From positions 25,730,001-25,794,000 of the forward strand of contig NC_047019.1 of assembly GCF_902652985.1 (NCBI RefSeq): DNA of 64,000 bases, given 5' to 3'. Positions 926-64,000 of this stretch are shown here, piece after piece. How positions within the stretch are numbered: position 1 is the stretch's first letter; the number at the start of each line of letters is the position of its first letter. The stretch is from Pecten maximus (taxonomy: Eukaryota). Both the position numbers and the translations under genes were made by a program. Below the pieces are notes generated by a model that made no database searches, was not told where the DNA came from, and saw only the letters and a program-made list of their open reading frames with translations.

Positions 926-1317
926 ATGATATAACATGTATACGTCCCTATTGTCGTTTTACAATACACAGACCTTATGCCCCTCCCTATCTAATATTAA
1001 ACAAACGTCCGTCCTGCCGTCTTAAACCGTAGATACCTTATAATCTATTCTACCATCTTACACTATAGAGACACAAACGTCTGATATGTCCTCTACCATC
1101 TTTCATTGCAAAGCATAAAAGTCATCCAGCATCTCACACTATCAATACTTATTCGTCCCTATTACAATCTTACACTACAAAACGTCATGTTTTTCCTATC
1201 ATCCACAAAACCTGAATTCGTCCGTCTTACCATCTGCCTCTTTATCAACATTATATGTCTCTCACGTCATCTTACCAGCCTCCCAAAACACACATACGCA
1301 CTGAACACACGCATGCA

Positions 1318-15542: not shown

Positions 15543-18500
15543 CTAAAAACTTGTGAGATCCTGGTTTTCGTCCGCGACTTCCTCGCCAAAGTCCAGCGTC
15601 ACTTCTGCGTCACACGAGGGGTCACTCTCCTGCATCATGGACATACTGTTCTTGTCCAGAGATGATATCGAGGTCGGGAGGGTCTCGCCGTTATAGGATG
15701 GGTTCTGGATCCCATTCTTAGTTTTGGCATTCATATCCTCTGACACCCTGCGTAGTATGTCTCGGTTTATTTCAAAATGTCCAGCCCTGGACTTCACGTG
15801 TCTACAAGACAAAAAAGATGCTTACTAATGCTGCAACAGGTGAGAGGTGTATTGTTTTCTTATTTTCAATGGGCTTCATTGCTCATCATACTCGAAGATA
15901 GAAGAAAATCCCGAAAAATAGTTATCTTGAAAATAAATAAATAGAGGAAAGTATGACACGCTTAATAATTTCCGTTAAAAAGATATCATTTTCACTTCAA
16001 ACATTTTTTAAACCGCAAAATTTGACTTATCAAAAGTATACAGTCTTTACAATATTTGCCCTGTGTATGTACATTGATATTGCTAATAAATAATACAAGG
16101 TTTATGGTATGTAAATGAGATGTTGGCAGCTGTGTTAGAATTAGGTCAGCATTAGATACAATATGCAGCATTACATATAATACAACTGTTGTATCGACAT
16201 AGACTAACAATCAATGGTAACGACAATCCGTAATGAAATGATATCATATCCATATCGACTCCTAGTATGATTGCCGACGCTTCTCAAAAAACAGTAATCT
16301 AGGTGTAAGTTTATTATGTATAAAGTATCAAATTCAAAGTGTATTCAACATTCTGAGGGAAAATACAAAAATCGAAGTAATTTAACATTGTCAAAATCTA
16401 TAGCGGTTACATGAATCATTTTTATATAAAAGTCACATGCATTTCTAATACATTATGAGGGTCAAAGCATTAGCTGTGAGATGAAAAAAGCGATAATTAT
16501 ATTCTCTAATATAATATTCAGAGTAAAACATGATGGAAACAATAAGCCACTAAATGAAGTGTAAATCATGATTTAGATTCATGAAACGAAATAAGAACAA
16601 ATGCCAGGTAGGTAAAACAATCGTCTTGTTTGCTCGGAGACGCATCAAGTAAATTTACATCAATGTATGTCTTGTCCTGATAGTAATTATATCATGGCAA
16701 CAACAACATCGAGTAAAATAAGGATCCTAATCGGATCTTTTTAAACAACACAACAAGATAAGTCATGTATTCTAATGGATAACTTTTAAAACGCGACAAC
16801 AAGCATGGATTTTAATAGAGATGTTTTTACAAACGATACAAGATAAGGTAGGAATTCTAATAGAGATCTTTTAAAACGCAACGCACAAGATAAGGCAGGG
16901 GTTTGAATAGATATCTGTTAACGTCACGACAAGCTCATATAGAGATTCTCATAGAGATTTTTTAAAACGTCACAACAAGGTAAGGTAGAGATTCTAATAT
17001 AAATCTTTTAAAACGCAACACAAGATAAGGTAGGGGTTTGAATGGAGATCTTTTAACGTCACAACAAGCTAGGATAGGGATTCTCATAGAGATTGTTTTA
17101 AACGTTACAGCAAGGTAAGGTTAGGGATTCCAATAGAGATCTTTAAAAACGCAACATAAGATAAGGTAGGGGTTTGAATAGAGATCTTTTAACGTCACAG
17201 AAAGGTAAGGTAGGGATTCTAATAGAGATCTTTAAAACGTACAAGGACTGATAGCATTTCTAATGACATCGTGATAACGGCAAAAATCTGTTTAGAAATT
17301 TGTGCGATACACATACATTTGTTAACACACATTTCACATGTTATATGTGACATAACCCTATCTAGGCTTTGTGATTTGGTACATTTGTACATTTCTTAGA
17401 CGATACAACCCCATTTTATATACGTGATTTTGTACATTTACACATTCTAAGATACAACCCTTCCTAGGCTGTTTGATTTGGCATAATGCGTCTATGACAA
17501 ATAAGCACAAAAAATGTAATAACAGTGTTCTACATTTATCAACTCTTATCACTTAAAAAGAAAACAATTTCAATGTGGCGACTTCCAAAGCAGAAAGAAA
17601 AAAACGTTCAAGGTTGATATCTAAACGTTTCATCATCACTAGATATCACCAATAGTGCAAATTTAAGCAGTGATGATTTATTATGAAAATGTTTGATATT
17701 TTTCCGATATATAAATGGTAAATTATAATAAAACGGCCACACTATTGTAACTACCAAGAGTACAGGCATAAACAGTGTATGCATGCAATACCAAAGTACA
17801 ATGTATTCAAATTATTACGATTTTCACGAAAGAAATACACAAATGTATATAAAGATATCAAAATATTCATATAGATAATGAAAATTTATTAATGAAGACT
17901 AAAGAAATTCATCAAAGCTTCTAATCGAAAAGTATAAAAGTCATGTTCGTGATTACAACATTGACGCTACTACATTTAAAGAAATGCATGCATGTCGAAC
18001 CTTAAATCTCTCCAGTGTTAGTATTTTATAGTTTGTAGTTATTAGTTCTGACTTTGCTCCTGAAATAGAATATGGCATAACACCAATTTTAGCTTGCATA
18101 TAACATAAAAACGGTTGTTTTTCAAGATCGTGCAAAATTGTTATGCAAAGAAGCAAACGTTATTTATATATATACCTCCCGATAAAACTAAGCTGTATAA
18201 CGTTACTGCACTACTGCAGTTTGTTTAAGTTGACGGTTGAAGCAAGTGTCTTTTCTACATTTGAAAACCATCTAACGAGAGTTAGATAAACATGATAGAC
18301 AGCCGTCATGTTTGTGTCACGAATTCTTCAACAACAAACTTATGAAATTAAAATCCTCCCATCGTAGCACCACAATTCTGATAGCCTAATCACGAAGTAG
18401 CAAAATTTAGATCACAATGGGGAAAAATTAGTATCTGCTATAAATATGTAATTTTACAAACATAAATATTAAGATGACAATCATTGTGCCGGTGCGTTTT

Positions 18501-21500
18501 ATTGATAAAACATTGTTTAAATGACTCCGCACAAATGTTCAAATATGACACCCGCGACGTCGGATGTCACAGCTAAATATTAGACTAATCACTGTCATAT
18601 TCAATTATCAGTCCGTTTCTGGAATTGGCAGGTGTGCTATCGTTGTTTATTGTGATGTTAAATGTTAATTCAAATATTGATTTATTTAAACACCGTGTAT
18701 TTCAACAAATATTTCGAAACAGTGCTTGAGGGCTGAACAATTTGACTATTTCACGAATGTAACTAACAGCATTAAATTGGAATTCAGTCATATATATAGC
18801 ATATACTGGACATGATGTTAGGGATCAAAGCCTGCAAATTCCATGGGGAAACTTTGGGTGATCAAATATGCATCAACAAATGGTTAATGTATGGAAGGTA
18901 ATGTCCCCTAGATACCCTAAATAATTTTCGATATTGGACAAAGAATAATCGTCCAATATTTTCACCAGGTCAAACATTAATATGTTTATCAAAATGAAAA
19001 GTATGTGCAAAGAATGTGTTTATGCATTCTGAAATTATCTAATGTCAATTAGCACCGTTATGATTAACTTTAAGGATGTGATAACAAACATCAAGTTGGT
19101 ATTTTATAGAATGGGCTTCCTTGGAAGTTTGTGAGTAATGCTGATATTGTAATGTAAAAGTAAGGAATTAACATACAAAGACACTGTCATCTTGAGAGTG
19201 TGTAAGGAGTAAACTACCCAGACGTACCTGGCACATATGATGCAGACTATGACAAAGATTATTAGGATCGCAGAAACGATGGACACGGGGACGATCACTT
19301 CAACTGAAACACAACGACATGATAAGTTCATACTGCGATAAGTTTTCGTCTGATGTTTATAATAAAATAATGAAATAAAAACAAATACAAATACCCTTTT
19401 TTTCCGAACAAAAAATAACTTCTGAAACTGATTTTTTAAACATGCTTACGTTTGTAGTTTTCGCCGTCCTGTCCTTGCTTTGACGTCATACTTGGTTTAG
19501 GTGATGTAAGTCCATCTGAGGGTGTCGCCGCCGTACTCGTTTTAGTCTGGACTGTTGTCGTGGTCAGTCGTTTAGTTGTTGTCGATTGTTTACTTGTTGT
19601 CATTGGTTTACCTGTTGTTTCAGTTATAGTTGTTGTCAAAAGTGAAGTCGTTGTTAATGGCTTAGATGTTGTCGATGGTTTAGTTGTTGTTGCAGAAGGA
19701 GTGGTTTTCAAGGGTGTAGTCGTTTTTAATGATGTAGTTGTTGTCAATGGTTTAGTTGTTGTCGATGCCCTAGTTGTTTTTGCAGTCGTTATTGTGGTTG
19801 ATTGTTGAGTTGTTTTCAATGGTTTTGTAGTTGTATTAATTGTCGTTGATGTACTTTGTTCTGTTGCTGTCGAAGGTTTATTTGTAGTGTTGGTTGTCGA
19901 TTGTTGAGTTGTGGTCGACGGCTGAGATGTTGTCAACGGTTTCGTTGTTGTCTTAGTCGTAGTCGTTGTCAATTGTTTTCCTGTTGTAGTTGGTTGTTTT
20001 ACAGTTGTTGTTAGTTGTGTGTTCGTCGTTTGTGTACTCAATGTTGTTTCCTGTTGAGTTGTTTGTTCTGTTGTTTTTGTTGTTGATGATGAACTAGATA
20101 CGGTGGTTGACTGTGAGGTTGATGTTGATAATGCCGAAGTTGTTGTCTGATTAGTTGGTGATTGCGTTACTGGTTTTGTTGTCGCTTCTGTTGAGGTTAG
20201 AGTAGATGTTATTGTAGTCGACGCGGTCGCTGTGCTTGATTCTGGTTCCTTTGTTGTTGTTGCCGCGGTGGTGGTGGCGGCAGCGGCGTCAGTAGTAGTA
20301 TTTCCGGTTGTGCTACCAGTTGGATCGCTGCATTTCATAGCTATATGACCATTCGCACCTGCAAAAGATGTTACTTAGAAACAATCACATCTGAAAACAT
20401 AAAACGTTATCGAATTGTATTTATAAACTGTGTATATTATGCATGTCGAAAACGAATCATAGGAGACGAAGCAAAACTATAATTGATTGTATCTAGTATT
20501 CGTATTTTTTCAATCCAGAGAAAAGATCCCGTAGTCGTGATGAAGAAGATTAAAAGGTTTATGAATAATCTTTCCTATGTGCTGCATTTTAAGTGAAGAT
20601 GTAATTGTATCTTTTGACTGGTTTGAAAACAAGTATGTACTGAAACACAACAATACTGTTTGAACAGGTAGCGTATTGTATGCATACTTTACTCTGTCCA
20701 TTATTTATAGAACGTACATGTATCAGAAAAGGATTGCTTGTTTCATAAGTAAATATATCATGTTGACGCTTCTCAAGTTATCCCTCGCGAGATATTGTAA
20801 AGTGTCGTTCCAATATGGCACGGCTACATACGTAACGATATCAATATATAAAATCCATACCTAGCGACAGGACCATGCAGTATCTGGTATCGAAAGGATT
20901 TGTCTCCATATGGAAGCTGACATCTATTGTATCCCCATTGTCTACAAGGATATTACCATTGATGTAGCACCTTTGGCTGACAGTGGTACTCCCTTTAGTT
21001 AGCACTAGGCGACTTCCACAGTTAGGATAGTTAGGTTGAAGGTCGACATGAGGGGAGAGAAAGATGTCTGAGGAGGCCACAGTATCCAGAGTAACAGTTG
21101 CTGTACAAAAACAAGTGGATGGTTTGGTCTGTCCCTCCGCCGTGTACGTGTCAATGATCACTCTCTTCCCTGATACTTCGGAGTTGGTGCACATGGAAGC
21201 CACTACGTAACATAAAGTATATCATATTTACACAGTTATATCATATATATTTACATTTGCTCCGCAATTCTCATTGACACAATGTTAAGAGGCAGTTACC
21301 ACCTTACGCCTGTAACACCCAGTGGGTCATGTGACATTTAAAAAGATTGTTTTCAGGTTTTTTAAAGTTGACAAAGATGGTAAGACTAAACAGTTGTTTA
21401 ATGTTGTTATATTCGATATAACAGCAAGATATATGGTAGGTAAATGCAGCATGGGAACCTGTGAGATTTCCCCACCATAGGTAGGGTTCCCATGCTGTAT

Positions 21501-31852: not shown

Positions 31853-34800
31853 TCAGACACCGGTATTCACTTCAGCATATACAACATTCCCCGAGTCTGC
31901 TTTCGGTTTTGGGCTTACGGGAGGTGGGCGTGACTTCACCCGTGACTGTGGGCGTGACGTTTCGTCCTGAGCACTCACTTCCGCGTACACTAAACCGTCC
32001 GCATTTCTATACCGAGACGGACGGTTGTCACCACTTTCATTACCGGTCTTTTCTTTTTTTGATTTGTTAACGACAGCATAAACATCTCCCTTCGGAGTTT
32101 CCTCTAGTTCCAATCTGTCAATTTCAGTGTCTTTTATTGTGGAATATTGATCTGACTTTCGCACCTGTGCGTACATATCGCCCGTTCCCGTGACTATGTG
32201 ACTGTCGTCCGGATCTCGGGGTCCGGCCGATTCATAGAGCGAGTTGTGAGTTATTGTGTCCCCGTCAGAGTTGACGTATTTCTTCATGGTTCCTGTGATA
32301 GCGTACGGTTGGATGTCACCGTCATAACCGTCATTCGTATTGCCGTTAGACGTGTTCCCACGGTCAACTGGCTGATGAATGTCTGGTTTTCTTCTCCTGT
32401 ACAAAAAAGTGATCTGTTAAAATCTTTTGTAAAATATGACACTTTCAAAGAAAAGCAATGTAACAACTTCAAAACTTCAAAACGCACATACAGTTAATTG
32501 TCAATAAAGCTAACAGTATAGTTGGACTGATAAGAAGATGTTCAAAATGCTTTTTAAAGCTCTAGTTAGACCACCACCTTGAGTATGCTGCAAGTGTTTA
32601 AAACCCATCAAAAGTAAAAGATATAGAACTCCTTGAAAATATGCAGAGAAGGGCAACAAAACTGATCCCTGGATTTAAAAATATCTCGTACCCGGAACAG
32701 CTACAACGGTTAAACCTCCCAACGCTACAACACCATAGGACCAGAGGAGATATGATTAACGTTTTTAAGATATTAAATAACATGTACGATAGTAGAATAA
32801 CAAAAATTTTTTTTTCCAAATGGACAATATGAGTAGAACCAGAGGTCACGATAAGAACATATCCAAAAGCGATGTCGTCTTGATGGAAGGACACATTTTT
32901 TTCAGTTACCGAGTTATTGATTTATGAAATAGCTTGCAACAAATTGTTGTCAATGCTGATTCTGTCATAAAATTTGAAATAATGTTAGATGGTCATTGGA
33001 AAATAACCGTTTTTATTCATGAATGTACAGGAACTAATATAAAACCATTAATTACACAGGAAATATTTTTATCATATGACTACCGTTATATACGGTGTCA
33101 TAAACCCATCACATAAATTTTCTTTATGACACTAGGTAATAACACCTTTCGCTACGCTGATTGGCTGGTTCCGTGAGAACTGTATTCATACGCGTGGGAA
33201 CGACCTACTTCTTTTTACTACGACTCGTAAAAATGGCGACTAGTGCTTGTAAACTTTGAAAAAAAATCAACTGAACGACAAATTGGTCTATTAACATAAC
33301 ATATTGTACAATCAAAGATAAAATCCAAGATGTAAACATCCTAAGTTTTTTAATTATATTTATACTATAAGATGTTAAATTAGGCCTGGCAAACATCTAT
33401 TTTATGACCCCTAGTAACATATTTCAACTCCGATAGAAAATTGCGGTTGCGTTGTCCGATGAGACATATCTAGTCTAGATTCTTTTCAAATAAACAAATA
33501 ATAACATTATTTAATAAAATCTTCATGAAAAACGGCAATGTAGTTTGTTACAACTTGCCTTCAACGGTTACTCAGAATAACATGCTGACACTGTCGTCGA
33601 CAAACACGTGTAATGTCAAAACAAACAACACTGCCAACAAATCGGCATCCAAAGTCGCTTTTCACGGCAGTCTGAACACAATGTTCAGTGGGAATATTCA
33701 CGGTGGAACATTTCACATCTCCAAAAACTCCCGCGAGGACGAGGATAAACACAAAGCAGTGAAAAGGCGCCGTACAATGGTTCTGTACGACAGCGACAGC
33801 GAATAGACATTTGTACAAGCCTCCATTATCGCGCCAAGTGACGTCACGGCTTCGTCACATCAAAAACAGTCGCTCATGAACTTTCAAACTAAAATATTTT
33901 CCTCATTGTTTCAAACACCAAGGACAATTTATCTATTATAGATTAAATGAAAAAATGCTGAAATTTTGTTTTGAGACGTTTATTTAATAAAATGAATCCT
34001 TTTCAAGAGTCAGTTGTGTTAGAACTATTTCTTCTCTCGTCGGTATAATTGACCTACTTCGAAGGTTCGGGTGATTTGGTTGAGATGTGACGATTCAAGG
34101 CAAAAGAAAAAATCAGTTTTTGATGGGGAACGATGAAAGAAAACTTCATATGATAAAAAGAAGCTGTCATTCGTTTCCCTTCATATTAGATTTATGATAC
34201 TCGTTTAGAATTTTTTATTTTTGCTCGCCAGAGGCTCGCAAAAATAAAAAATTCAAAACTCGTATCATAAATCTAATATGAAGGGAAACTCATGACAGAT
34301 CCTCTATATATTACACTATGTATTGATATGGATATGGATATGGATATAGAGGCTACAAGCCTGCGTCCATTATTTATGCTAATAAATGCTAATAAAAAAC
34401 ATGATATCACGAACTCAAAACATAGGAAAATATATTTAAACAAAATATAATACGTTGTTTTATATGCTAGCTATTAGAACATGAAATTTGGTTTGTACAC
34501 AAAACAACAAAATACATTCCATTTTGTAATTTACTTTCTGTTCATGTTTCTGCTGTATGGTAATATGCCTACCAGGCACCTGTCATTTTTGTTTACAAAT
34601 AACGGGCCTAGAGATAGGCATACAAAAAAAAATGGGTGAATTAACCAAGTAGACAGACGGATTTTTCCATTCATTTATTGCTTTAAACCTTACGGTTTAT
34701 CAGTACAAATATTTTCAGTAAATACATGACAAATATTTACATAAGATACACACAAATGGTACCTTACAAACACACAATGACCACACACACAGAGACTACA

Positions 34801-40800: not shown

Positions 40801-42876
40801 AAAATATGTTTAAAAGGTGCAAAGCAGCAATTTTTTCGACCGCTGACTATAGTTCTCGGGGCTATAAATAGCCCCAGAGAACCAAAAACACTTCAGTTGC
40901 TTACCTGGCGAAATTAAAATACAATGTCCTGACTTCCATTGTGTACCATTTTCTGCCCTGGTCAACGTCAGCGTCAACATGTCTGCTGTCCCGAAATTGT
41001 CCACCGACGTAGCAGGGATCGGGCTACAACCGGTCTCGGTAAAACCAGCAGATGTAGTGGAGGTGATACGAAGTTTACTTGCACAGTTAAGATCTGTTTC
41101 TACTCCCGGATATTCCTGTACTGTCACTGTTGTTGTACGTGATATTTTCGTATTCAGTGTAACGGTACATGTACAACTGTATATCCCCGGGCCTCCCGTA
41201 CCCCAGGTGTCTATTACCATACGTGTGTTATATAGTATCGCCTCCTTGACACATAGTCATAACTACAATTGCAAACAAGAAATAAATATAATACATTTAA
41301 TTCAATACCATTCCCGACAAATAGTAATTACACTCTACTGTGAATTTGATCCTGCCTTAAAATTCCTGTAATTTCTTAAACATAGGCAGCAAATTATATT
41401 AAATTATTCGTTCTCAATTGTTCTGTTCTAAAACATGTTGAAACTCTTATCATTATTTGTGATATTTTTCCTTGTCTGATTGTTTTTAATTCCAGATAGG
41501 TTTGTTAACGGAAACCTAATCTCCTGGTTCCAGATTCATCAATTCACGGTAAAAAAAATAGTTATGAACCTTAATGCGTTCCTATGGAAAATGTTAAGCT
41601 AAGAATGTTATTACGTTAAAGAACGTTAATGAAACTGGAGCCAGATAATAATAGCATACCGTGATTAAAATTTTCTAGCTTAGTCTGATCCGTACATGGC
41701 GTTGTAATGATCCCTGTAATAGATACTTTACATCAACATTGATATAGAATAATAATTTTGATCTACATTGAATGTAAAGTAGCATGAAATGAAATAGAAA
41801 GTTGGTGTAATTGTTATCCATACACATGGACTGCATTTATATAGGAACGCAGTCAGTACATTAAAATAGAGCACCATTTAACATGCAAAACAAAGCTAAA
41901 CAAATAAATGTAAAAATTGTTAATAAAACTCGAGCGGAAAGTATAAACAAAAACATGGTTAACATGTTGGTGGTTTTTTTATGAGGATAATAAAACGAGA
42001 TATTCCGGAAGGGTAATCGTAACCCTCGCAGCTCACATCCTCAAAGCTAATCTAGGATAATAGATTATTTTCAGGTGAAATCATGACGACCATTGACCTC
42101 TTGCTCACTCTCTTTAAAATCATATTTCTAAGCGTCTTTCTTAGCAGTCGACATCTTTTACGAGGAATAGTGATAGTTAGGACTGGTTTTAGAATTTTAT
42201 AACATAAATACATAATAGCGCATAAAACGATATCCTCGTACGTATACGAAAGGGAAAATTGAAATAGATTTCAGTGTGATGAAAGAGGTGCATGTTAAAC
42301 TACATTACCAATACCAATATTGGTGTCAAATCACACCGAGTGAGTCATTGGTAATTTTCATCAGAAATTACACATTCACATATCATAACTGTATTAAAAA
42401 ATCCAATGACATGATTATTTTTTTTATTTATTTTCATTGTTTATATTGTTTGACAGATAATACCACACACGTAACGTGGAACCTAAAATAAAACATGTTG
42501 AGCCTTGTAAATAAACAAATACAACTAATCGCTGAACACCCAGACAATACTTTCATGTGTTATAATCGTACAGATCACGCTGCAATAGTATGTTATTAAC
42601 ATAGATTTTATTCGGCGTGAATATTAGAATACTAGTATATACCTCCTCATTATTTACAGCTTCAAACATGTAACATGGCATCATGTACTATATTTAATAG
42701 TAATAATAGTTATCAACATCTTAACTTTGTCACACAATAATTTGATCAGTAGTGTCAGTGAAATCGCCTTTGATATTTACTTCCGCATCAGAGTTACCTG
42801 TAACACACACGCTGAGAAGTAACCACACAGACGTAATTACTGTCAGTACGCTGAGCTTGTCCTCCCTGCCTCTCAT
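31853..42876 (-). CDS. Receptor B: ITIM-bearing type-I membrane protein, about 471 aa if one +1 frameshift in exon 3 is corrected (possible pseudogene). Exons 42876-42798, 41713-41660, 41262-40905, 39206-38904, 38144-38066, 32396-31853
   Basis: Signal MRGREDKLSVLTVITSVWLLLSVCVT; 8-Cys domain; Thr/Pro stalk; TM GIIAGTAGGGGLLVVIAIIVGVVIS; tail with DMYAQV, DVYAVV, LVYAEV and VVYAEV. Exon sizes 79/54/358/303/79/544 compare with 79/55/357/222/79/514 in paralog C. Confidence 0.82.
32525..33050 (+). mobile_element. CR1/L2-type LINE 3' fragment; its tail resumes at about 34310-34400 after a nested insertion
   Basis: LVRP.LEYAASV, then ENMQRRATKLIPGFKNISYPEQLQRLNLPTLQHHRTRGDMINVFKIL, characteristic of the CR1 ORF2 C-terminus. 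A tandem ATGCTAATAA tail lies near 34376-34396. Confidence 0.85.
33058..34309 (+). mobile_element. Internally deleted Crypton-like element nested in the CR1
   Basis: Flanked by a 7-bp direct repeat ATTACAC (33051-33057, 34310-34316). Subterminal inverted repeat TTTTTATCATATGA / TCATATGATAAAAA. Long 3' hairpin at 34164-34298. Relic ORF 33525-33806 (MFSGNIHGGTFHI..KRRR..DSDSE) resembles C-termini of Crypton tyrosine-recombinase proteins; family assignment is from recall. Confidence 0.6.
34850..35120 (-). mobile_element. 3' fragment of a non-LTR retrotransposon (RTE-X-like C-terminal Cys/His motif)
   Basis: RLSSHKLNIETGRY..NRMCTYCDSGDVEDAYHFIVKC. Confidence 0.75.
35121..35563. repeat. Three near-identical tandem copies of a 147-bp unit
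   Basis: TTGACATTTG recurs at 35147, 35294 and 35441. Confidence 0.95.
36760..37730. repeat. 22-bp minisatellite (ACATCTGTTTAACCTGTACCCT)n with a homogeneous 54-bp higher-order core at about 36880-37140
   Basis: Visible directly; the core gives the 18-aa periodic ORFs at 36864 and 36875. Confidence 0.95.
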
Positions 42877-53381: not shown

Positions 53382-56300
53382 TTATACTCCTCCGTCAGTG
53401 TTAACTTCCGAATATATTACTCTGTCAGCGTCAGGTTTTGGTTTAGGCCTGACTGGAGGACGAGACTTGGGACGAGATGTATCATCTATCTCCGCGTACA
53501 CTAAACCTTCCTGGTTTTTATATCGAGAGGGCCGTCTATCCTCATCCGTTTGTGATTCATCGTTCCTGTCGTCTGACTGTTTCCCTGGCTTATTTACAAC
53601 GGCATATACGTCGCCAGAGGGAGCTGTCACTGCATGTCCTCGTGTTGAACTGTTTGAATGTTCTGTCTCAGAATTTTCATTTGTTGCTGGCTTCTGGACC
53701 TGCGCATACATATCGCCAGTCTCTGTGACAATATGGTTATTATCCGGAACGCGTGGTCCCGCCGATATGTAGAGAGAATTTTGAGTTAGTGTGTCTGAAC
53801 CTTCGTCATGATAAAATTTTGGTGTTGCGACAGCATAGGGTTGGATGTCCACAGAGAAATTTTCCTCGGGGTTCTTCGCATCTGAACGTTTTTTCCTATT
53901 AAGAATAAAGTATTAAGTACATGTATAAACAATTTCAAATCACCGATCCACGTTTAAATATTTACGTATCGTCAACGTCTTTGTCGTATTTTGAACTGTT
54001 GTGTTATCGTGTTCGTTTAAGTTCGTACGTGTTAGATTTCTAAACAGTTTATTATGAAGCACACTATACAATTGTATAATTATGGTAATAAGCTATGCAA
54101 TTATTTCATTTCATAATCATATCTGTAGATTACACTATATATATAGCACTGGGTTGTTCTGATTTTGATATCAATACATCTGTAACGTTACATCTGAAAT
54201 TATCTGCCTTATTATCCAGTAAGTAGACCAATGACTATACTATTAATACTACAATGCCGCTAAGGGCGATGCCTTTACATGTAATTATCTAATCATTGCT
54301 ACAATAACGATAATAAAGACGATGGATATTTACTTACTACTACAATGATAAGGACAATGACTACAATTATCTTATTGTTATTACATTGAAGATGATAACA
54401 ACAATAACTATACGTACATTTTTATTATTATAATGACGATGATAAAGACGATGACTTCACTTACCTCAGTACTATAACAATGACGATGATAAGGACTTGA
54501 CTGCATTTACCTTATTATTATTTCAATGAAAAAGATAAGGACGACGAATAGCATTAGAGCAATGACTACTTACCTAATTATTACTACAATGACGATGATA
54601 AGGACGATGAGTAAAACTGCACCACCGCCGGCTGCTCCAGCAATAATCTCCACTAAAACAGATACTAGTACAATACAAACACTGGCACCTCAACATACGG
54701 TACAGCATGCTCAACATATTGAAACAAACACGAGTGTTATTTACAAATACATTGTAGGCCTAGTTATCGCGTTCATGTATTTACTGAATCACAAAGGTTT
54801 CACTATTTGCGTGCACTAAGTAAGTTTGGACATTTTCTTAGCTGTCATGTTTACGTATATCGTAGCTTTAAATATAATTTAAGTAGGAACAGGACTATCA
54901 TGTGTGTTATGTGGAAATGTTTCTAAGATCCGTGTACCTATAAAAACAGATATCACTTACCTCCTATTGACGACTCCTTTAATTCTCCGTTGTTAACATC
55001 ACCATTACCTTTACCCAATGTACGATTGGTAATGGTCTGTATGGAACTGGAGCCGGTAGTGATCGACGTCGTCGTCGGTGTCGTCGTTGTTGCTGTTGTC
55101 GCCGTCTTTGTCGTCGTCACAGAAGTCGACGGAGAGCTGTCTGATCCGCGCGGTGCATCACAAGTTACATTTAAAGTAACATCTATCAAAGAATGGTTAC
55201 CGTGTTACGTGAAGTGTTAACGCAAGTGCGGGAAACAATGAAAATCTTATTAAGAATCAGTGTATAGTTCAGGTCGTATAATAGTATTTGTCACACTACA
55301 CTGAAGCTCAAGAGAAAATTGAATGTTTAGATGATTAGTTACCAAGTACGTAGATTACATAACCTCGAAACGATTGTCATTAAGCCTTGATCTGACAAAA
55401 TAAATGCGTTCTTGTTCACAATAAATATAATCTGACATGAGTAGCTCGGCTGGGTCATGTATGTGCGGCTAGTTCTTTTTGTTTTGATTTTGTTTTTTAT
55501 CAGCAAAAGCCGTATTGATAGATTAAAAGATGCATTATTTGATGTGAAACTTTTTATGCATATCTAGTTCTGTGTGGAACTGTGTGTCTTACCAAGAGGT
55601 ATTGCCTTACTATGTATACCCAAGTTTGAACAAATACGGTTAATAAATGATATGAAATTGAAACAGAATTACAACAGAAACTTGCATTACATATGGAATA
55701 TCGAAATATGGAGTATTTTAACATATCAAATAACTCAATATATACATTTATATTGCATGTGTATTTACTGGTAAAACTCGTTAAAACCTAATCTTACTGA
55801 TTGATGTTAGCTCTATATTATGTTATCCGAGGCGACGTGCGAAGGTCAACATATCACCAAAAGACGTCATACTACTATTATTAATTATTACTTACCTGAT
55901 TTAATGAAGATACAGTACCCGGATTGCCACGGGATGTTGTCATCTGATCTGGTTAACGCAATATTGTAAACCTCGTTGATTGTAAAGTTTGTGATGATGT
56001 CCCCACTAATTTGCTGACATTGATATTCTGTAAATGTATTTACAGGAAGCCTGGTAAATCTTAGTTTACTTTTACAATCAGACGCCGGCACTGTATCAGG
56101 ATAAGCATTGATGTCGAAGCGGACGGGAATCGTATGAGCCACAGTCAGTCTAACTGTACACTGACAACTGATGTGTCCTAACCCTCCTGTGTCGTACGTA
56201 TCAACCACCACACGGCCAGCAGTTAAAGTCCCACTCCTACACATCGGTACCACTGTAAGGTCAAATACATCTCATTAAAATGTACCAATATTGATAATAT

Positions 56301-57127
56301 GATGTTAAGTTAGGGTTTTAATGCTATAGCAGATTCACTTTTTTTATTCTAACGTGAATAAGAGAACAAGAACACAGTTGCAATGGATATTTTAGAGGAT
56401 TTTTTATATACGACCTTAGCTGAACACCATCATTATATTAAATTCTTAAGGTTGTTTACCTCCATCACATTTATCAACGGTATATCTTGATACATATTTG
56501 TTTAACAGTGAAAGGTATTGTAATGAAATCATACTCATGATTTTGCAATCAATTATTTATATATGAATTTGGGTGTTATTTATCAAATGTAAAGAAAATA
56601 TAGATCAGACCCAAATACAGTAAATATAAAGAGATCGTTGGGAGAGTATGATACCGTTTGTGAAGCCGTCCTGGTCAGCTTCTATCAGTGCATATTGTTG
56701 ATTTGATACCTGGAAATTGATGTATAGAAACAGTTTAGAGAAGTACTTGACTCTCTGAAAAGTAAGTATTTTGAAGTACATGTAGCATGTTCGATTAACA
56801 AAACTCTTTTGATTTAACATATCACTAGTACATATATATAACCAGAAAACAGGTCAATGACCCTGAAATTATACGTAACCCTACTGGTGTGGACCGTTAC
56901 AAACCCGTTCAATGTGTTATTACTTCCTGTATTGACTAATCTGAGCCTTCTGAAAAAAAAACATTGAGCACAAATTTACGATCTCAGTATGACGTTTCAT
57001 TTAAATACATTACATTTTCAGAATACTTCCTGTTTACAGAAGACCTACCATGATAATGGAAACAGACCAGTATCAATAGCAGCAGACCAATAGATGATGT
57101 CTTTACCTTGATGGCAATGCGACACAT
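53382..57127 (-). CDS. Receptor C: ITIM-bearing paralog of B, about 434 aa if one +1 frameshift in exon 2 is corrected (416 aa if exon 2 is skipped). Exons 57127-57049, 56709-56655, 56252-55896, 55182-54961, 54652-54574, 53895-53382
   Basis: Signal MCRIAIKVKTSSIGLLLLILVCFHYH; the domain exon aligns without gaps to B; TM EIIAGAAGGGAVLLIVLIIVIVVII; tail with DMYAQV, DVYAVVNKP, LVYAEI and VIYSEV. GT..AG introns with the same phases as A and B. Confidence 0.84.
54230..54610 (-). repeat. Degenerate tandem repeat of about 45 bp built from the 3' end of receptor C's TM exon plus its splice donor
   Basis: Minus strand repeats GTCCTTATCATCGTCATTGTAGTAATAATTAG|GTAAGT-like units, with extra AG|GTAA donors near 54510 and 54464. 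Confidence 0.8.
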
Positions 57128-58875
57128 ATCTACCGTAAGTACAAACCACTTCTGTCGTTTACGTCACTGTCTGAAAAATGTCGACATCAAAAACTTCACA
57201 GTATATATATAGTCTTAGACTTTGTTTACAAACCACAATCATACTCTAGTGTTAAGAGACTGTCTAAATATAGACGTCCAAACTGGTTATACGCCGGTAT
57301 TAAATACGTGAATATATAACCTGTTCAAAACCACTGGAGCGAGACGTCACCAACATTCGAGTTTTACACAAGGGAGACAACACGTATTTCAACAGCACGA
57401 CGGTGAGAGCTTCTATCATTTTATTTATCAATACAAATTACAGTGTACTTTTTATAACATTTTATTAAAATTCAGAAATGTTAATTGCATATTTACATAT
57501 TCGAATATACTCATTGAAATGCTCTAGTAAACAGTACAAATAGAAATTGATGACAAGGTATGTGCAAATTAAAATGTGCTTAATACCATTTTATTAAATC
57601 AGGAATACATTTACTATCTTTTGGGGGAAGCTTGAAATGTCACTCAAAGCTAAAATAGATTTGATAACTCATTTTAAACTTTATAACAGTTTGTACAATC
57701 AGTCTAACTGGTTCGAGATCTGATGGAACAGGACTTCCCTCTAACGGTCCCTACATTCGATGTAATAGTTAACAGCATTGATATAATAGCTTTAACCTTT
57801 TAACTAAGCTTTTACACAGTGATTATATAATTTGTTAAGGAAACGAGGTATATTGTTCTTTAAATATGATGAGTGTGCCAAGCTTTTGATTCCGGATAAT
57901 TGTATGTGAAAAGTTTGCCAACACTAGTGAGAATCATATCATTTTTATCGTTAAATTTAATCTGATAATGATAAGACTGGAGAGAATTGCAACTATCAGA
58001 CTTCATACACTCAGTAAGTACCAAACACTTCCAAAACTGCATTTTATACGTGTTCATGACAGAATCATGACTAACACTTTCAGTCTAGTCGACCTTTGGC
58101 ATTTGGTCCTCTTGTTCATAATACTCACATATTTTCTGACTTTTTTTATGTAAGTAGTTAATTTAAAGGTTTCAGCAACAGGATGGTCCAGACATACTAA
58201 CCTTATCTTTGTTCAATTCAGTACACTTTGGAATCATCACCTCCTATGAGAGAACCGCATAGAGACTGTCATCTACATTGTAACTCTTCACACAGAGATC
58301 ATGGGTTAATTTCTCACGTGCGTACTTCGGCCACACATCAAAGTCTATCGTGCAGATTTATCAACGGTTTTAGACCAAAACAAAACACTTTATATTACAG
58401 TTGTCTAGAAAATAGGATGTGAAAATTGACAATTTGCTGAAACCGGTTTACGTTTATCGAAGAATATACTGGTAATATTTCGTTCTGAAATAGATTTCAT
58501 TCACATCAACTAGGAATAGGTAAATTTGATTAGATCGATATAAAATACCTCTTTTTACATCGGAATGCCATCAAAGTTGAAATGTGTATTTGTGCTTTTT
58601 ACAACATTACAAGCGAAGTACATTAATGTGTTTCAGACATATATTTTATTTCTTTTTCTAAAACTCTCTCTGTAAATCAAAACCCTCTTTGTCAGTCGCT
58701 GCGGCGCTAACCTACCCATATTTAATGCTTTTTAGATAGATTCACAGTAACATATATAAACCCGGAAGTTAAAATACCACATATGTAAGCTTACATTAAA
58801 AGTGAACGTCAACAAGCGGAACAGTCAGTACACAAACTGTAAGTAAGAAACTTGTCTAATAACACACAGACAACG
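57128..58875. promoter_or_regulatory. 1.75-kb divergent (head-to-head) intergenic region between receptors C and D
   Basis: Near D: TATATAAA (58753-58760), ETS site CCGGAAGT (58762-58769) and ACCACA. Near C: TATATATA (about 57202-57211), TGTTTAC and RUNX-type AACCACA (57231-57237). Confidence 0.5.
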
Positions 58876-61800
58876 ATGTTGTGGAGTAGTGTTTGTGTCG
58901 CCATCACTCTGTACAAAGGTATGGTATTTGTTTTAATTCTTCACATACATACTTTATTGTATATAGCGACAACCTTGTTCAGCCTTGGCAGCTAGACTCT
59001 GTAGAACCATCTTGTTCTATAATTAGGGCACTGTATCTGATATGTTGACTATTGTTTCGCTATATCAAGAAATAATTTCAAAAACAAATTACTTTTTTAG
59101 AAATCATAGTTCTTCAGTTTTGAGGACGATGTTTGACCGAATCATCTTAGGGTTATGGTTCTTTATATTTTGTAAATTTATTAACTCGGTTGTCTCTTAC
59201 AAGATTATTTGTATTTGTTTAAATATTTTCCTTTTACCAGTGCTCGTATTGTCATCGTTAACATCTATATCAACAACAGACGCATGGACTACAACTACCG
59301 ACCAACGGACTACAACAACCGACCAATGGACAACAACTACCGACCAATGGACAACATCTACCGACATATGGACAACAACTACCGACCAATCAGCTACAAC
59401 TACTGACCAATCGACTACAACTACCGACCAATTATCCACAACAACGTTCATCACAACTACGACCCCACCTTCTAGAAACTCTTACACAAGCACCTCCATA
59501 ACTGCATCATCTGAAGCAGGCATAACAACTTCAACGGCGACTACAATGACATCTACAGACACCGAAAGAAGTACTGATACCAAAATCGTGACATCAACAT
59601 TCGGGCCCACTATATCCACGGAATCCACATCAGAGACAAGAACTACCGTTGAATCCACAACTGTGTGTCCAACAGACACATTTCCGTATGGTATGTATAC
59701 TATCTTATAACAAGAGATCGCAGAGGGATCTTGGCGCCAACCATTGAATGATCTTTATAGGTTCCATGTCAGATTGATCTTTTCTATACTTTTCCCTTCC
59801 TCTAAGTCTTACTAATCTGTGTAAATTCAGAAACAGCCCTCTAGTACTTTTCAAACAAAGGGAACCTATATAACAAATTTAAGATTTAGCGATAATGGCT
59901 GTATGTCGGCCATGTTGTTTTCAGATTGGTCCAAAAATGCAATATGCATAACTATGCACCGAGGGGAACCTACATATGAAATTTGAGAAAGATCCCTTCA
60001 ATACTTTCGGAGAAATAGCGATAACAAAACTTCAATTGTCAAAATCCAAGATGGCTGCCTGTCGGCCATGTTGTTTTTCTGATTGGTCTCAAAATGCAAT
60101 ATGCATAACAAGGCACCGAGGGGAACCTACATATGAAATTTGAGAAAGATCCCTTCAATACTTTCGGAATAATAGCGGTAACAAACTTCACTTGTCAAAA
60201 TCCAAGATGGCTGCCTGTCGGCCATGTTATTTCCTGACTGGTCTCAAAATGCAATATGCATAACTAGGCACCAAGAGGAACGTACATATGAAATTTGAGA
60301 AAGATCCCTTCAGTGCTTTCTGAGAAATAGCGATAACAAACTTCAATTGTCAAAATCCAAGATGGCTGCCTGTCGGCTATGTTGTTTTCCGATTGGTCTC
60401 AAAAATGCAATATGCATAACTAGGCACCGAGGGGAACCTACATATGAAATTTGAGAAAGATCCCTTCAATGCTTTCTGAGAAATAGCGATAACAAACTTC
60501 AATTGTCAAAATCCAAGATGGCTGCTTGTCGGCCATGTTGTTTTCCGATTGGTCTCAAAATGCAATATGCATAACAAGGGACCAAGAGGAACCTACATAT
60601 GAAATTTGAGAAAGATCCCTTCAGTGCTTTCTGAGAAATAGCGATAACAAACTTCAATTGTCAAAATCCAAGATGGCTACATGTCGGCCATGTTGTTTCC
60701 TGACCGGTCTCAAAATGCAATATGTATAACTAAGCACCAAGAGAAACCTACATATGAAATTTGAGAAAGATCCCTTCAGTGCTTTCTGAGAAATAGCGAT
60801 AACAAACTTCAATTATCAAAATCCAAGATGGCTGCCTGTCGGCCATGTTGTTTTTCGATCGGTCTCAAAAATCAATATGCATAACTAAGCACCAAGGGAA
60901 ACCTACATATGAAATTTGAGAAAGATCCCTTTAGTGCTTTCTGAGAAATAGCGATAACAAACTTCAGTTGTCAAAATCCAAGATGGCTGCCTGTCGGCCA
61001 ATTTGTTTTCCGATCGGTCTCAAAATGCAATATGCATAACTAGGCACCGAGGGAAACCTACATATGAAATTTGAGAAAGAATCCTTCAATGCTTTCTGAG
61101 AAATTAGCGATAACAAACTTCAATTGTCAAAATCCAAGATGGCTGCCTGTCGGCCATGTTGTTTTCTGATTGGTCTCAAAATGCAATATGCATAACAAGG
61201 CACCGAGGGAAATCTACATATGAAATTTGAGAAAGATCCCTTCAATACTTTCTGAGAAATAGCGATAACAAACTTCAATTGTCAAAATACAAGATGGCTT
61301 CCTGTCGGCCATGTTGTTTTCTGATTGGTCTCAAAATGCAATATGCATAACTAGGCACCAAGGGAAACCTACATATGAAATTTGAGAAAGATCCTTTCGG
61401 TGCTTTCTGAGAAAAAGCGATAACAAACTTCACTTGTCAAAATCCAAGATGGCTGCCTGTCGGCCATGTTGTATTTCGATCGGTCTCAAAATGCAATATG
61501 CATAACTAGGAACCAAGGGAAACCTATATATGAAATTTGAGAAAGATCCCTTCAGCACTTTCTGAGAAATAGCGATAACAAGAATTGTTTACGGACGGAG
61601 GGACGGACGGCCGGCCGGACGGACGGACGGACCACGGACCACGGACCACGGACGCAGGGCGATTTGAATAGCCCACCATCTGATGATGGTGGGCTAAAAA
61701 AGCACATATTGATTTTTTTAATACATAGATTCCAGGCCTATACGATGTATCACATTATTATGTTATCGCCTTTGATCTTTGTATAAACACATCTTATCTT

Positions 61801-63159
61801 AAAATTTTATTTTAAAATTTTGGGATAAAATTTTCAAAAAAAACCAGATAAATTTCCATAATAAGTATCATCAATCTACTATATAGTTATGGAGTGTAGA
61901 TATTTAGATAATAAAGAAACCAGAAAACTATATGGTTCTAGCTGACAGGAAAGCTTTGTTTACAATATATTCATATCAGCCATCAGTCTTACAGAAATGT
62001 ACATTTGCATGCAAACAACATATATTCATTCATACAACCTGAAGTTATATATCATAATTAGAAATATCTTCGTTACCACTATGATGTAGATCGTTCGTGA
62101 CATCATGTTGCTCAGTAAGGGATATTTTTACTCCTTCCGAGAATACTTTCTTTCGTACATTCGGGAGTTGCTTATACAGTCTGTCCATTTTACCAAAGAG
62201 TATATAAGGTAAAATACAATGTTTAATCTATCCTCGTTATTTCGAAACTAGTTGGGTCAGGCAATCGAGGTACTCGAATTATCAGAGCTCGAGATAGCGA
62301 AGTTTGACTGTAGTTCAATTGAAATACTATAGTAGAACAAAACATGACACGTTTTAGCTATATTACAGTCGCTGTTATCGTCCCTGTCGTGGTAACAATA
62401 CTGATCGTGCTGCTGGCTACAGGAGCTAACGTAATCCTCTACAGACGGTATGTATGACCTATATTATATATATATTATTTACAACTTTTCAATTCTTTTC
62501 AATAAAAAACTACCATTTTACAGAAAAATGGAAAGCAAATCCATGTCACCGTATCTGGGGCAAATAGAGCGTACTGTTAAATTAATAAACGGCTCCTAAA
62601 ATCCCTTATCATAGAAAATACTCCTTATTCACGGGAAAGATAACGGTTACATTATCTATAATTCATTTTGTTTTTCATACATTGATGTTTATCAAATTTA
62701 TTTCAAATATCAAACGAGACACAAGCGATTGCTCAGAACGTTAAACATCATTTTTGTTTTATAACTAAATGAAGGTTCAAAGAACGTCATTTTATCAATG
62801 AGCATGATACCCATGAGAGTTGTGACAGAGTACATACAACATACGAAAGCGCATCATGGAATATTTTAACATAACTCTTTTAAGAAGAGATTCACTTCAT
62901 CTAAGAATCCCATTGTCATTATTACCTTACCTTAACTTTAACGTTTTGTAGACGTCTTGCTCTGGCACAAAAACCGATGAACGCTTATGGCGTCGAGACA
63001 CCAACTCCTGCAACGTATGAAAGCCTTGGTGTCAACAGAGAAAAACCATCCGAGATGTACGATGTAGTTGGTAAAGACAATGCTAAAACACCTAGAATTT
63101 ATGAAAATATGAGCGCCACTACTGAGAACCAATCAGATATGTACACTGAGTTGACATAA
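58876..63159 (+). CDS. Receptor D: mucin-like type-I membrane protein, 259 aa, with a multi-tyrosine ITAM-like tail. Exons 58876-58918, 59241-59690, 62369-62447, 62952-63159
   Basis: GT..AG introns with phases 1,1,2; total 780 nt = 260 codons. Signal MLWSSVCVAITLYKVLVLSS; Thr-rich ectodomain; 79-nt TM exon VAVIVPVVVTILIVLLATGANVILY-RR; tail with YESL, YDVV, YENM and YTEL. Confidence 0.85.
59285..59435 (+). repeat. Coding 21-bp minisatellite (7 copies of TTTTDQW-like) in the receptor D ectodomain
   Basis: ACAACTACCGACCAATGGACA-like units in frame within exon 2. Confidence 0.9.
59708..61702. mobile_element. Satellite-bearing non-autonomous element (Helentron/pearl-like) with about 11 internal 155-bp repeats, in intron 2 of receptor D
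   Basis: Starts AACAAGAG; AAAATCCAAGATGG-type anchors recur every 155-156 bp (60041, 60197, 60352 ... 61439); then a (GGAC)n microsatellite, the terminal hairpin TAGCCCACCATC-tgat-GATGGTGGGCTA (61669-61696) and an A-run. Confidence 0.88.
62255..62312. mobile_element. Terminal fragment of a Tc1/pogo-like MITE
   Basis: ...CTCGAGATAGCGAAGTTTGACTG-TA is the reverse complement of a TA-CAGTCAAAC-type terminus; no partner end found. Confidence 0.4.
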
Positions 63160-64000
63160 ATTTTAGACAGTAATACAATGTAAGAAAGAGAGACAATTGT
63201 ATACCTATAGTCCGGCCAACAAATTAAACATCTTTCACCAGTGCTTTTTATGTCTGAATGGTAAAAAGAAACGGTTATCTTAGTATAGTCATATTTTAAG
63301 TTGTATTATAACGACATGAAGGTTGTTGTGATGTGTAGTATTATCAGCTATTGACAGTTAAGGTCATTTAAGGGAAGCTCGTAAACACGATTTACAGATA
63401 CATATATAATTTACATGCTTTCATTTTATATTACAAACAATACAGATAAATATATCTAAATCATGGTTTGTTGAAGGAAACCGAAAGAAAACATACCGTC
63501 GGTGCGTTGATAACATACAATTCCAGGTCCGATCAGGAAATTGCATCCCGACTGCCTTGGCGATTGTACATGGTATCCAATGCACCCACGGTACAAAGAA
63601 CAATTGCAGGTAGTTCATGTTTATGAATCCTTTTTACCAGCGTACAATATGTCTAAAAGTTCCAGCCTAATGGTATGAAAACATTCCATTCAGAGATGAC
63701 AATAGTGTTCTTTCTGATAAGAAAATGCTTCCTGGCTTAACGAACTGTTGCCTGAAGTCAAGATTTCGTGGAAACATACTTCATATCAGTGATCTCAATG
63801 GTGTTTGCGGAATAATGCTTAGAACAATTTAATTTCTTTGCTTCTTCATCCATATATTGTCATCAAATCACCAGCATAGAATAGAGAATGTTGAATGCTG
63901 TCAGCGAAATATTGTTATAGTGGTGTATCTTGTGCATATTCTCTATCTTTTAGCTGACACACAAGTTGTGTACTCTAAATAATCAATGGCGCAATTTTAT

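What the first reader, a model, noticed from the sequence alone, without database searches (positions are those of the whole stretch)
62952..63159. Receptor D tail: four YxxPhi motifs at an exact 14-residue period
Seen: YESLGVNREKPSEM / YDVVGKDNAKTPRI / YENMSATTENQSDM / YTEL. The Tyr-to-Tyr distance is 14 three times although the spacer sequences are unrelated, so the spacing rather than the sequence appears constrained. Established: ITAMs are YxxL/I pairs, canonically 6-8 residues apart and longer in invertebrate receptors such as Draper; YxN binds Grb2 and YxxM binds PI3K p85, and YENM satisfies both. Inference: two tandem ITAM-like units (x10 spacer) for a Syk/Shark-type kinase, making D the activating member.
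Basis: partly seen in the sequence, partly recalled or inferred. Interest (0 to 1): 0.78.

Follow-up and report, generated by a model that had tools for sequence, protein, structure and literature searches.

The report
Tyrosine-repeat tail of scallop mucin-like protein
The evenly spaced tyrosines are real and sit in the expressed last exon of a small mucin-like membrane protein of a scallop, but the even spacing is the footprint of an old three-fold duplication of a 42-base unit rather than proof that spacing is selected, and an ITAM-type activating role stays an untested possibility.

Summary
Observation: confirmed in part. Exon 62952-63159 (+, codons from 62953) has Tyr at residues 12, 22, 36, 50 and 64, so the last four are 14 apart, and each is YxxΦ (YESL, YDVV, YENM, YTEL). 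The claim that the spacers are unrelated is wrong. The 42-nt units match in register (62%, 50% and 36% identity against about 28% expected; non-Tyr codons 44% vs 29%, p≈1e-4). The period is therefore inherited from a tandem triplication.

RNA contigs from three studies join a Thr-rich stalk exon (ends 59690), a TM exon (62369-62447) and the tail exon. D is an expressed single-pass protein of about 259 aa with a 70-aa tail. It has no exon for the CUB-like domain of neighbours A-C, so it is not their paired counterpart.

No paralogue of the tail exists in this genome, which is probably Pecten maximus. No relative appeared in 1.84 billion proteins, a set shown to hold four scallop proteomes. The ortholog test of spacing could not be run.

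Most likely the tail is a multivalent phosphotyrosine docking tail, with a YxNM site like CD28. The ITAM consensus is met only loosely: the x10 spacer lies within the broad 6-12 range, but V and M sit at +3. The result is ordinary to mildly interesting.

The parts
58876..58918 (+). Predicted first coding exon (start codon plus 14 codons of a hydrophobic signal-like segment, phase-1 donor AAAG|GTATGG). Not verified by RNA. An in-frame unspliced start inside 59042-59240 is an alternative.
   Evidence: Read. No RNA contig reached this far.
59241..59690 (+). Ser/Thr-rich mucin-like stalk exon (about 150 codons, one Cys near the membrane). Its 3' end is confirmed; its 5' acceptor is predicted.
   Evidence: The loose ends of contigs X1, X3 and X9 before 62368/9 read the last 30 nt of this exon. 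Pfam finds nothing.
59284..59432 (+). Young 21-bp (7-aa, TTTDQW-type) tandem repeat inside the stalk exon, 7.1 copies at 85% matches.
   Evidence: TRF.
59895..61581 (.). 155-bp satellite (10.9 copies) inside the stalk-TM intron; not coding.
   Evidence: TRF. No RNA contig depth from 61700 (where the laid stretch begins) up to the TM exon.
62369..62447 (+). Transmembrane exon: an uncharged hydrophobic helix of about 24 residues followed by Arg residues.
   Evidence: Contig pieces 62368-62446 in X1, X3 and X9, and the GT..AG joint 62446/7 to 62951/2. Sequence.
62952..63159 (+). Last coding exon: 68 codons of cytoplasmic tail plus the stop. This is the finding itself.
   Evidence: Covered by contigs of four runs with no indel in the coding part.
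63016..63057 (+). Repeat unit 1 (YESL plus 10-residue spacer).
63058..63099 (+). Repeat unit 2 (YDVV plus spacer). G63067C in run X9 makes it YDVL.
63100..63141 (+). Repeat unit 3 (YENM plus spacer). It is 62% identical in DNA to unit 1.
63142..63156 (+). Truncated unit 4 (YTELT), followed by the stop at 63157-63159.
63160..63400 (+). 3' UTR. The X1 contig runs 318 nt beyond 63400. It is more polymorphic than the coding exon (3 SNPs and 3 indels in X9).
   Evidence: tables 3, 4 and 8.

Best explanation
D is an expressed small type-I membrane protein, about 259 aa if the predicted first exon is right. Its order is a signal-like N-terminus, a Thr-rich and probably O-glycosylated stalk, one uncharged TM helix and a 70-residue disordered tail.

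The tail is a degenerate tandem array of 3.3 copies of a 14-residue (42-nt) unit. Each copy keeps an aliphatic or Thr residue at -1, Tyr, an acidic or Thr residue at +1 and a hydrophobic residue at +3. The exact 14-residue period is inherited from that in-frame duplication. It does not need separate selection on spacing. (Shown.)

Inferred: the retained [M/I]-Y-[E/D]-x-Φ cores look like Src-family kinase sites. Once phosphorylated they would serve as several SH2 docking sites. The third (YENM) is a YxNM site of the CD28/DAP10 type for p85- or Grb2-like adaptors. On this reading D works as a multivalent phosphotyrosine scaffold on a mucin-like membrane protein. It is not a ligand-binding partner of the neighbouring CUB-like receptors.
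For: Splicing and expression: contigs of runs X1, X3 and X9 (three studies) join 59690>62369 and 62447>62952 with GT..AG. X12 covers the tail exon.

Repeat origin: in-register DNA identity is 62%, 50% and 36% against 28% expected. Non-Tyr codons give 44% against 29%, p=1e-4. Spacer-only matches are 36/81 (hand count).

Precedent in the same genome: the B/C-type tail at C5:28,022,736 repeats its GD[MI]YAQV block at an exact 37-residue Tyr period, through an obvious young duplication.

Constraint on the cores: Tyr and the +3 hydrophobic residue are kept in all four units while the spacers decayed. The only coding difference among four runs is the conservative V39L at a +3 position. The adjoining UTR carries 3 SNPs and 3 indels in the same contig.

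No ectodomain: the A/B/C N-domain sequences and their 9-sequence profile find nothing on the + strand between C and the stalk exon.

YxNM precedent: PMC2193818.
Against: No phosphorylation or binding data exist.

No ortholog or paralogue could be found, so conservation of the Tyr residues across species is unknown.

Three units that have diverged to 36-62% identity without a single indel is mildly unexpected. The B and C tails, at 59% identity, show six indels in about 155 residues. Some length constraint therefore cannot be excluded.

The 5' exon is unverified.

Src-site and SH2 preferences are taken from vertebrate knowledge, not tested here.
Confidence: 0.55

Rival explanations
1. The four tyrosines form two (or three overlapping) ITAM-like pairs with a selected 10-residue spacer. 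These recruit a Syk/Shark tandem-SH2 kinase, so D is an activating signalling chain.
For: Broad ITAM definitions allow 6-12 residues between the YxxL halves (PMC3576117, PMC6994640).

The oyster CgIgR ITAM (YTEL-x8-YEKL) binds CgSyk (PMC6994640), and D also ends in YTEL.

Acidic +1 residues resemble ITAM halves.

The X9 allele turns pair 1 into YESL-x10-YDVL, which fits the broad consensus.

There is no indel among the diverged units, whereas B/C tails have six indels.
Against: The premise that the spacers are unrelated is false.

In the reference, two of the four +3 residues are V and M, so no pair meets YxxL/I...YxxL/I. The canonical 6-8 spacer is not met.

There is no acidic residue at -3 of Y22.

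D lacks the A-C ectodomain and has no charged TM residue, so the paired-receptor logic does not apply.

No conservation data are available.
Confidence: 0.15
2. The YxxΦ motifs are tyrosine-based sorting signals read unphosphorylated by AP-complex mu subunits. They would drive endocytosis or lysosomal delivery of a sialomucin-like protein, in the manner of endolyn/CD164 or LAMPs.
For: All four motifs fit YxxΦ. The last sits 4 residues from the C-terminus. The ectodomain is mucin-like.
Against: Lysosomal YxxΦ signals usually lie within about 10 residues of the membrane in short tails (general knowledge). Here the nearest is 24 residues from the membrane.

Four copies with a conserved aliphatic -1 and acidic +1 look more like kinase sites.

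Related B/C tails keep similar Tyr blocks next to ITIM-like LxYxxV and VxYxxV motifs.
Confidence: 0.12
3. The tail is a young, lineage-specific and effectively neutral product of minisatellite-like expansion. The periodic tyrosines have no specific function.
For: No relative in this genome. None among 1.84 billion representative proteins, a set that includes four pectinid proteomes.

The gene is not found as an annotated protein.

The gene also carries a young 21-bp repeat.
Against: It is spliced and present in RNA-type contigs of several independent studies.

The frame is intact over units that have diverged by about 50%.

Tyr and +3 are kept in every unit.

The coding part is less variable than the UTR in run X9.
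Confidence: 0.13

Closest known systems
ITAM-bearing chains (FcR gamma, DAP12, CD3 zeta; Draper; oyster CgIgR)
   Same: Cytoplasmic Y-[acidic/T]-x-[L/V] motifs in pairs. The spacer of 10 lies within the broad 6-12 range. YTEL also occurs in the CgIgR ITAM (PMC6994640).
   Different: Two of the four +3 residues are V and M. The canonical 6-8 spacing is not met. There are four equally spaced sites rather than discrete pairs. There is no charged TM residue as in DAP12 or FcR gamma. No sequence homology was detected.
YxNM costimulatory motifs (CD28 YMNM, DAP10 YINM, immunoglobulin tail tyrosine)
   Same: YENM satisfies both pYxN (Grb2) and pYxxM (PI3K p85), as does CD28 YMNM (PMC2193818, PMC6435016).
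   Different: It is a single site inside a repeat array. Nothing but the four-residue motif is shared.
Membrane-tethered mucins with signalling tails (MUC1-type) and transmembrane adaptor proteins (LAT/PAG/SIT-type)
   Same: The architecture is similar: a Ser/Thr-rich repeat ectodomain or no binding domain, one TM helix, and a roughly 70-residue disordered tail with several Tyr docking motifs (comparison from general knowledge).
   Different: There is no SEA domain, no palmitoylation CxxC and no homology. This is an analogy only.
Tails of the neighbouring CUB-like receptors B and C (window 31853-32404 and 53382-53852, minus strand)
   Same: All are Tyr-block tails with an aliphatic residue at -1 and V/I/L at +3 ([GS]D[MV]Y..V). 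The membrane-proximal Y-[AG]-V-x-T-P...Y-x-x-x-G is similar (pairwise E 0.05). The genes lie in the same cluster, head to head with C.
   Different: The similarity is not significant. D has none of their two C-terminal ITIM-like motifs (LVYAEV, VVYAEV). It has no CUB-like domain. Its tail is less than half as long.

Membership tests
ITAM (canonical, Reth motif) | Two YxxL/I halves | tested here: not met
   The +3 residues are L, V, M and L. No adjacent pair has L/I in both halves in the reference. The pair YESL/YDVL exists only in the X9 allele.
ITAM (canonical, Reth motif) | Spacer of 6-8 residues between halves (6-12 in the broad definitions of PMC3576117 and PMC6994640) | tested here: inconclusive
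   The spacer is 10 in all three pairs. That is outside 6-8 and inside 6-12.
ITAM (canonical, Reth motif) | Acidic residue two to three positions before the first Tyr (D/ExxY) | tested here: not met
   The residues before Y22 are P-A-T. E or D occurs at -2 of Y36 and Y64 only.
ITAM (canonical, Reth motif) | Binding of the doubly phosphorylated motif to a Syk/ZAP-70/Shark tandem SH2 | not testable with these tools
   This needs peptide binding or co-precipitation.
ITIM / ITSM | [S/I/V/L]xYxx[I/V/L] or TxYxx[V/I] | tested here: not met
   The -2 residues are A, E, R and D (N for Y12). By contrast B and C carry LVYAE[VI] and V[VI]Y[AS]EV.
YxNM dual Grb2/PI3K site | pY-x-N-M | tested here: met
   YENM at residues 50-53. 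Motif match only; binding was not tested.
Tyrosine-based sorting signal YxxΦ | Y-x-x-bulky hydrophobic in a cytosolic tail | tested here: met
   Four matches. The context (distance from the membrane) is atypical for lysosomal signals.
CUB-like/mucin/TM receptor family of the cluster (A, B, C and about 16 more in the genome) | N-terminal CUB-like domain of about 115 residues with conserved Cys | tested here: not met
   tblastn with the A, B and C domains and the 9-sequence profile find about 19 copies in the genome. None lies on the + strand of window 56300-62950.
CUB-like/mucin/TM receptor family of the cluster (A, B, C and about 16 more in the genome) | Homologous cytoplasmic tail | tested here: inconclusive
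   D vs C tail gives pairwise E 0.052. D vs B gives E 13. The own-genome search with the D tail finds no paralogue.

The most novel reading that the evidence does not exclude
The 14-residue pitch is held by selection. Four phosphotyrosines would then form a ladder of three overlapping ITAM-like pairs on a domain-less, mucin-like signalling chain that serves the neighbouring CUB-like ITIM-type receptors. That would be an invertebrate analogue of DAP12 or FcR gamma, built de novo by expansion of a 42-bp minisatellite, possibly one related to the 42-bp satellite on contigs C11 and C3244.
Probability: 0.06. Interest if true: 0.65.

Novelty: new member of a known kind. Interest (0 to 1): 0.3.

Why it matters
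If the tail does signal, it shows how an invertebrate builds a multivalent phosphotyrosine docking tail quickly, by in-frame tandem duplication of a short Tyr module. The same mode appears in a paralogous tail with a 37-residue period.

It would also add a lineage-specific member to the poorly charted tyrosine-motif repertoire of bivalve immune-type gene clusters. This cluster holds CUB-like receptors with ITIM-like tails next to an expanded cGAS-like (Mab-21) gene.

As it stands it mainly serves as a caution. Exact motif periodicity in a disordered tail should be tested for a repeat origin before it is read as a spacing constraint.

Tried and rejected
1. Orthologs and paralogues.
- Own-genome six-frame search with the tail found only weak hits to a 42-bp satellite.
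- Word search with the tail exon was blank.
- Exhaustive HMMER over 1.84 billion representatives gave four hits. All are long bacterial or viral-type proteins with repeated ...NPSEALDVVGN... units. Their scores are inflated by up to 8 repeated stretches, so I rejected them as spurious.
- Word search with the non-repetitive half of the stalk exon was blank.
- Exact look-up was blank.
- A control with the neighbouring Mab-21 ORF found Pecten maximus, Mizuhopecten yessoensis, Argopecten irradians and Ylistrum balloti proteins. The blanks are therefore not due to missing scallop proteomes. A 68-residue disordered query does need about 45 bits to register.

2. Synteny walk. The Argopecten Mab-21 ortholog and the last exon of receptor A are syntenic. 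The interval that should hold a D ortholog lies beyond the 10-kb flank, and no tool could fetch it. A second Mab-21 protein on that chromosome lies 15 Mb away.

3. Satellite origin. The 42-bp satellite reads ...YLGIETPTPP... against D's AYGVETPTPA, with 13 identical nt in a row. A sequence profile of the satellite scores the D tail at only 10 bits (E 0.037 in the window). An unrelated site at 58868-58928(-) scores 11 bits. I do not count this as significant.

4. Transposon context. The exon and its flanks (62460-63700) are single-copy.

5. Pfam on all pieces found nothing for D. PDB sequence search found nothing.

6. TM exon of D against that of A: no alignment.

7. TRF and the seed-based repeat finder miss the 42-nt repeat.

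8. The sigma-70/terminator scan is irrelevant to a eukaryote.

9. The script machine was lost. The spacer-only count and the satellite codon comparison were therefore done by hand from printed sequences.

10. The joined spliced protein was not searched. Exons were searched one by one, by reference.

Full report
**What is in the sequence.** Translating from 62953 gives 68 codons and a stop at 63157-63159. 62952 is the last base of a codon split by an intron, and AG at 62950-62951 is the acceptor. Tyr residues stand at 12, 22, 36, 50 and 64, so the gaps are 10, 14, 14 and 14. In 200,000 shuffles of these 68 residues, three equal consecutive Tyr gaps arise with P=0.003. Together with four YxxΦ the figure is P=2e-5. 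The pattern is real and is not chance.

**Why the period is exact.** They are not.
- Cut at the Tyr codons, the 42-nt units share 26/42 (units 1 and 3), 21/42 (1 and 2) and 15/42 (2 and 3) identical bases in register. Composition predicts 0.28.
- Offset 84 is the best self-match of the whole exon (z 3.9).
- Leaving the Tyr codons out, in-register identity at offsets 42 and 84 is 44% against 29% in 20,000 codon shuffles (p=1e-4).
- Counting only spacer codons 5-13 by hand gives 13/27, 15/27 and 8/27 matches. That is 44% overall, about 3 SD above expectation.
- At protein level, E-K-P-S-E-M lines up with E-N-Q-S-D-M.

The tail is therefore an old, in-frame, roughly 3.3-fold tandem repeat of a 14-residue unit. 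The equal spacing is inherited from it.

The same genome gives a precedent. A B/C-type tail at C5:28,022,736 carries its GD[MI]YAQV block three times at an exact 37-residue Tyr period, in units that are still obviously alike.

The three D units have drifted to 36-62% identity without any indel. The B and C tails, at 59% identity, differ by six indels over about 155 residues. That is a weak hint of length constraint, roughly P 0.05-0.1 by my estimate. Only orthologs can settle it.

**The gene.** RNA-type contigs of runs X1, X3 and X9 (three studies) show three things:
- a GT..AG joint from 62446/7 to 62951/2;
- an exon at 62369-62447;
- before that exon, loose letters identical to the last 30 nt of the Thr-rich open frame that ends at 59690.

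X12, an RNA library, covers the tail exon. The X1 contig runs 318 nt past 63400, so the 3' UTR is long.

The TM exon encodes an uncharged hydrophobic helix followed by Arg residues. The stalk exon (59241-59690) is Ser/Thr-rich and holds a young 21-bp repeat. A start codon at 58876 with a hydrophobic 14-codon exon and a phase-compatible donor is my prediction for exon 1. No contig reached it.

With that exon the protein is about 259 residues: a signal-like segment, a mucin-like stalk, a TM helix and a 70-residue tail. I did not search the joined spliced protein. Each exon was searched by reference.

**Variation.** Across four runs the coding tail has no indel. It has one difference, G63067C in X9, which changes YDVV to YDVL. 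The same contig carries 3 SNPs and 3 indels in the next 240 nt of UTR.

**Surroundings.** Three genes on the minus strand (A, B and C) share an N-terminal exon of about 115 residues with conserved Cys, a mucin stalk and a TM helix. B and C also share a Tyr-rich tail.
- A 9-sequence alignment of the N-terminal domain (A5) folds with moderate confidence (pLDDT 69, pTM 0.68).
- The model matches CUB domains best: spermadhesins, Kremen, PCPE-1 and C1r CUB2, with TM-scores of 0.6-0.7.
- Pfam does not see the domain.
- The profile finds about 19 copies in the genome, mostly on this chromosome. None lies on the + strand between C and D's stalk exon.

D therefore lacks the family's ectodomain. It lies head to head with C.

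The B and C tails are 59% identical, while their CUB-like domains are about 36% identical. Their last two Tyr blocks (LVYAE[VI] and V[VI]Y[AS]EV) fit the ITIM pattern.

D's tail resembles C's only weakly. A Y-[AG]-V-x-T-P start and an [S/G]DMY block give a pairwise E of 0.052.

**Relatives.**
- The D tail has no paralogue in the 918-Mb genome, and its flanks are single-copy.
- The word searches and the exact look-up were blank.
- The exhaustive search of 1.84 billion representatives returned four long repeat proteins of bacterial or viral type. Their ...NPSEALDVVGN... units happen to resemble ...EKPSEMYDVVGKD..., and their scores sum over up to eight repeats. I regard them as spurious.

A control with the Mab-21 ORF at 7463-9556 found 624 relatives, named as Pecten maximus, Mizuhopecten yessoensis, Argopecten irradians and Ylistrum balloti proteins. 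The window's own copy sits on a contig of 51,398,101 bases. That is the same length as the contig of P. maximus LOC117326901. The window is therefore very probably Pecten maximus. Scallop proteomes are in the library, and D is either unannotated and lineage-specific or too diverged for a 68-residue query.

Synteny with Argopecten holds for the Mab-21 gene and the last exon of A. The interval that would hold a D ortholog could not be fetched.

**A side lead that did not hold.** The weak own-genome hits are a 42-bp satellite reading ...YLGIETPTPP... against D's AYGVETPTPA, with 13 identical nt in a row. It has the same period and a similar Tyr register, which was tempting. A sequence profile of the satellite scores the D tail at only 10 bits (E 0.037 within the window), and an unrelated site scores higher. 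I leave it as unproven.

**How it most likely works.**
Shown: an expressed single-pass mucin-like protein whose tail is a diverged tandem array. The array keeps an aliphatic or Thr residue at -1, Tyr, an acidic or Thr residue at +1 and a hydrophobic residue at +3 in every unit, while the spacers decay.

Inferred from established vertebrate knowledge: aliphatic -1, acidic +1 and hydrophobic +3 is the preference of Src-family kinases. pY-[E/D/T]-x-[L/V/M] suits many SH2 domains. YENM is a YxNM site like CD28 YMNM, which binds PI3K and Grb2 (PMC2193818, PMC6435016).

I therefore read the tail as a multivalent phosphotyrosine docking platform (confidence about 0.55).

The ITAM reading is a special case that I cannot exclude (0.15).
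- For it: broad definitions allow 6-12 residues between the halves (PMC3576117), and an oyster ITAM (YTEL-x8-YEKL) binds oyster Syk (PMC6994640).
- Against it: in the reference no pair has L/I in both halves, the canonical 6-8 spacing is missed, and the paired-receptor argument fails because D has neither the shared ectodomain nor a charged TM residue.

Sorting signals (0.12) and a neutral young tail (0.13) are the other rivals.

**Verdict.** The thing is a new, apparently lineage-specific member of a known kind, a tyrosine-motif signalling tail. Its periodicity comes from a repeat origin. Interest is modest.

Noticed in passing
window 7463-9559 (-): A single-exon 698-aa ORF with Mab-21 nucleotidyltransferase and Mab-21_C domains plus a TPR-like C-terminus (a cGAS-like receptor type). 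It belongs to a large pectinid expansion: 624 relatives at E<=1e-10, and the best Argopecten irradians ortholog is 68% identical and syntenic.
   Followed up: partly
window 20841-21203, 40810-41220, 55888-56253 (-): The N-terminal exons of receptors A, B and C form a Cys-conserved domain of about 115 residues that Pfam does not detect. AlphaFold2 (pLDDT 69) with Foldseek places it with CUB domains. About 19 copies exist in the genome, mostly on this chromosome, in clusters near 10.96, 11.55, 18.26, 25.53-25.79 and 27.96-28.01 Mb.
   Followed up: partly
L015:1510-1857 (G000:C5:28,022,736-28,022,993, +): A paralogous B/C-type tail in which the ...HVVT.SGD[MI]YAQV.K... block is repeated three times, with Tyr exactly 37 residues apart. 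This is a young tandem duplication of a Tyr module.
   Followed up: partly
L002 (G000:C3244:1-1893) and G000:C11:37,844,830-37,849,976: A 42-bp satellite, about 95% uniform, with an open frame reading ...LYLYLGIETPTPPH... It shares the period, the Tyr register and a 13-nt identical run with the start of the D tail. A profile test was not significant.
   Followed up: yes
window 59895-61581: A 155-bp satellite (10.9 copies, 92% matches) fills much of the intron between D's stalk and TM exons. It is followed by an (ACGG)n tract at 61591-61654.
   Followed up: no
window 15543-15812 (-) and L012:3513-3788: The last exon of receptor A is conserved between the window and Argopecten irradians. The NPSY (NPxY-like) site of the window copy reads NPGF in Argopecten, so that tyrosine is not conserved.
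   Followed up: no
window 31853-32404 vs 53382-53852 (-): The B and C tails are 59% identical with invariant Tyr blocks, while their CUB-like domains are only about 36% identical. The two C-terminal blocks fit the ITIM pattern.
   Followed up: partly
window 559-926: A 24-bp tandem repeat (15 copies, 93% matches) is open in a frame reading SYTTDPPS-type octapeptides. It may be another mucin-like exon.
   Followed up: no
window 63067: G>C in the contig of run X9 changes Val39 to Leu (YDVV to YDVL). This is the only coding difference seen among four runs.
   Followed up: partly
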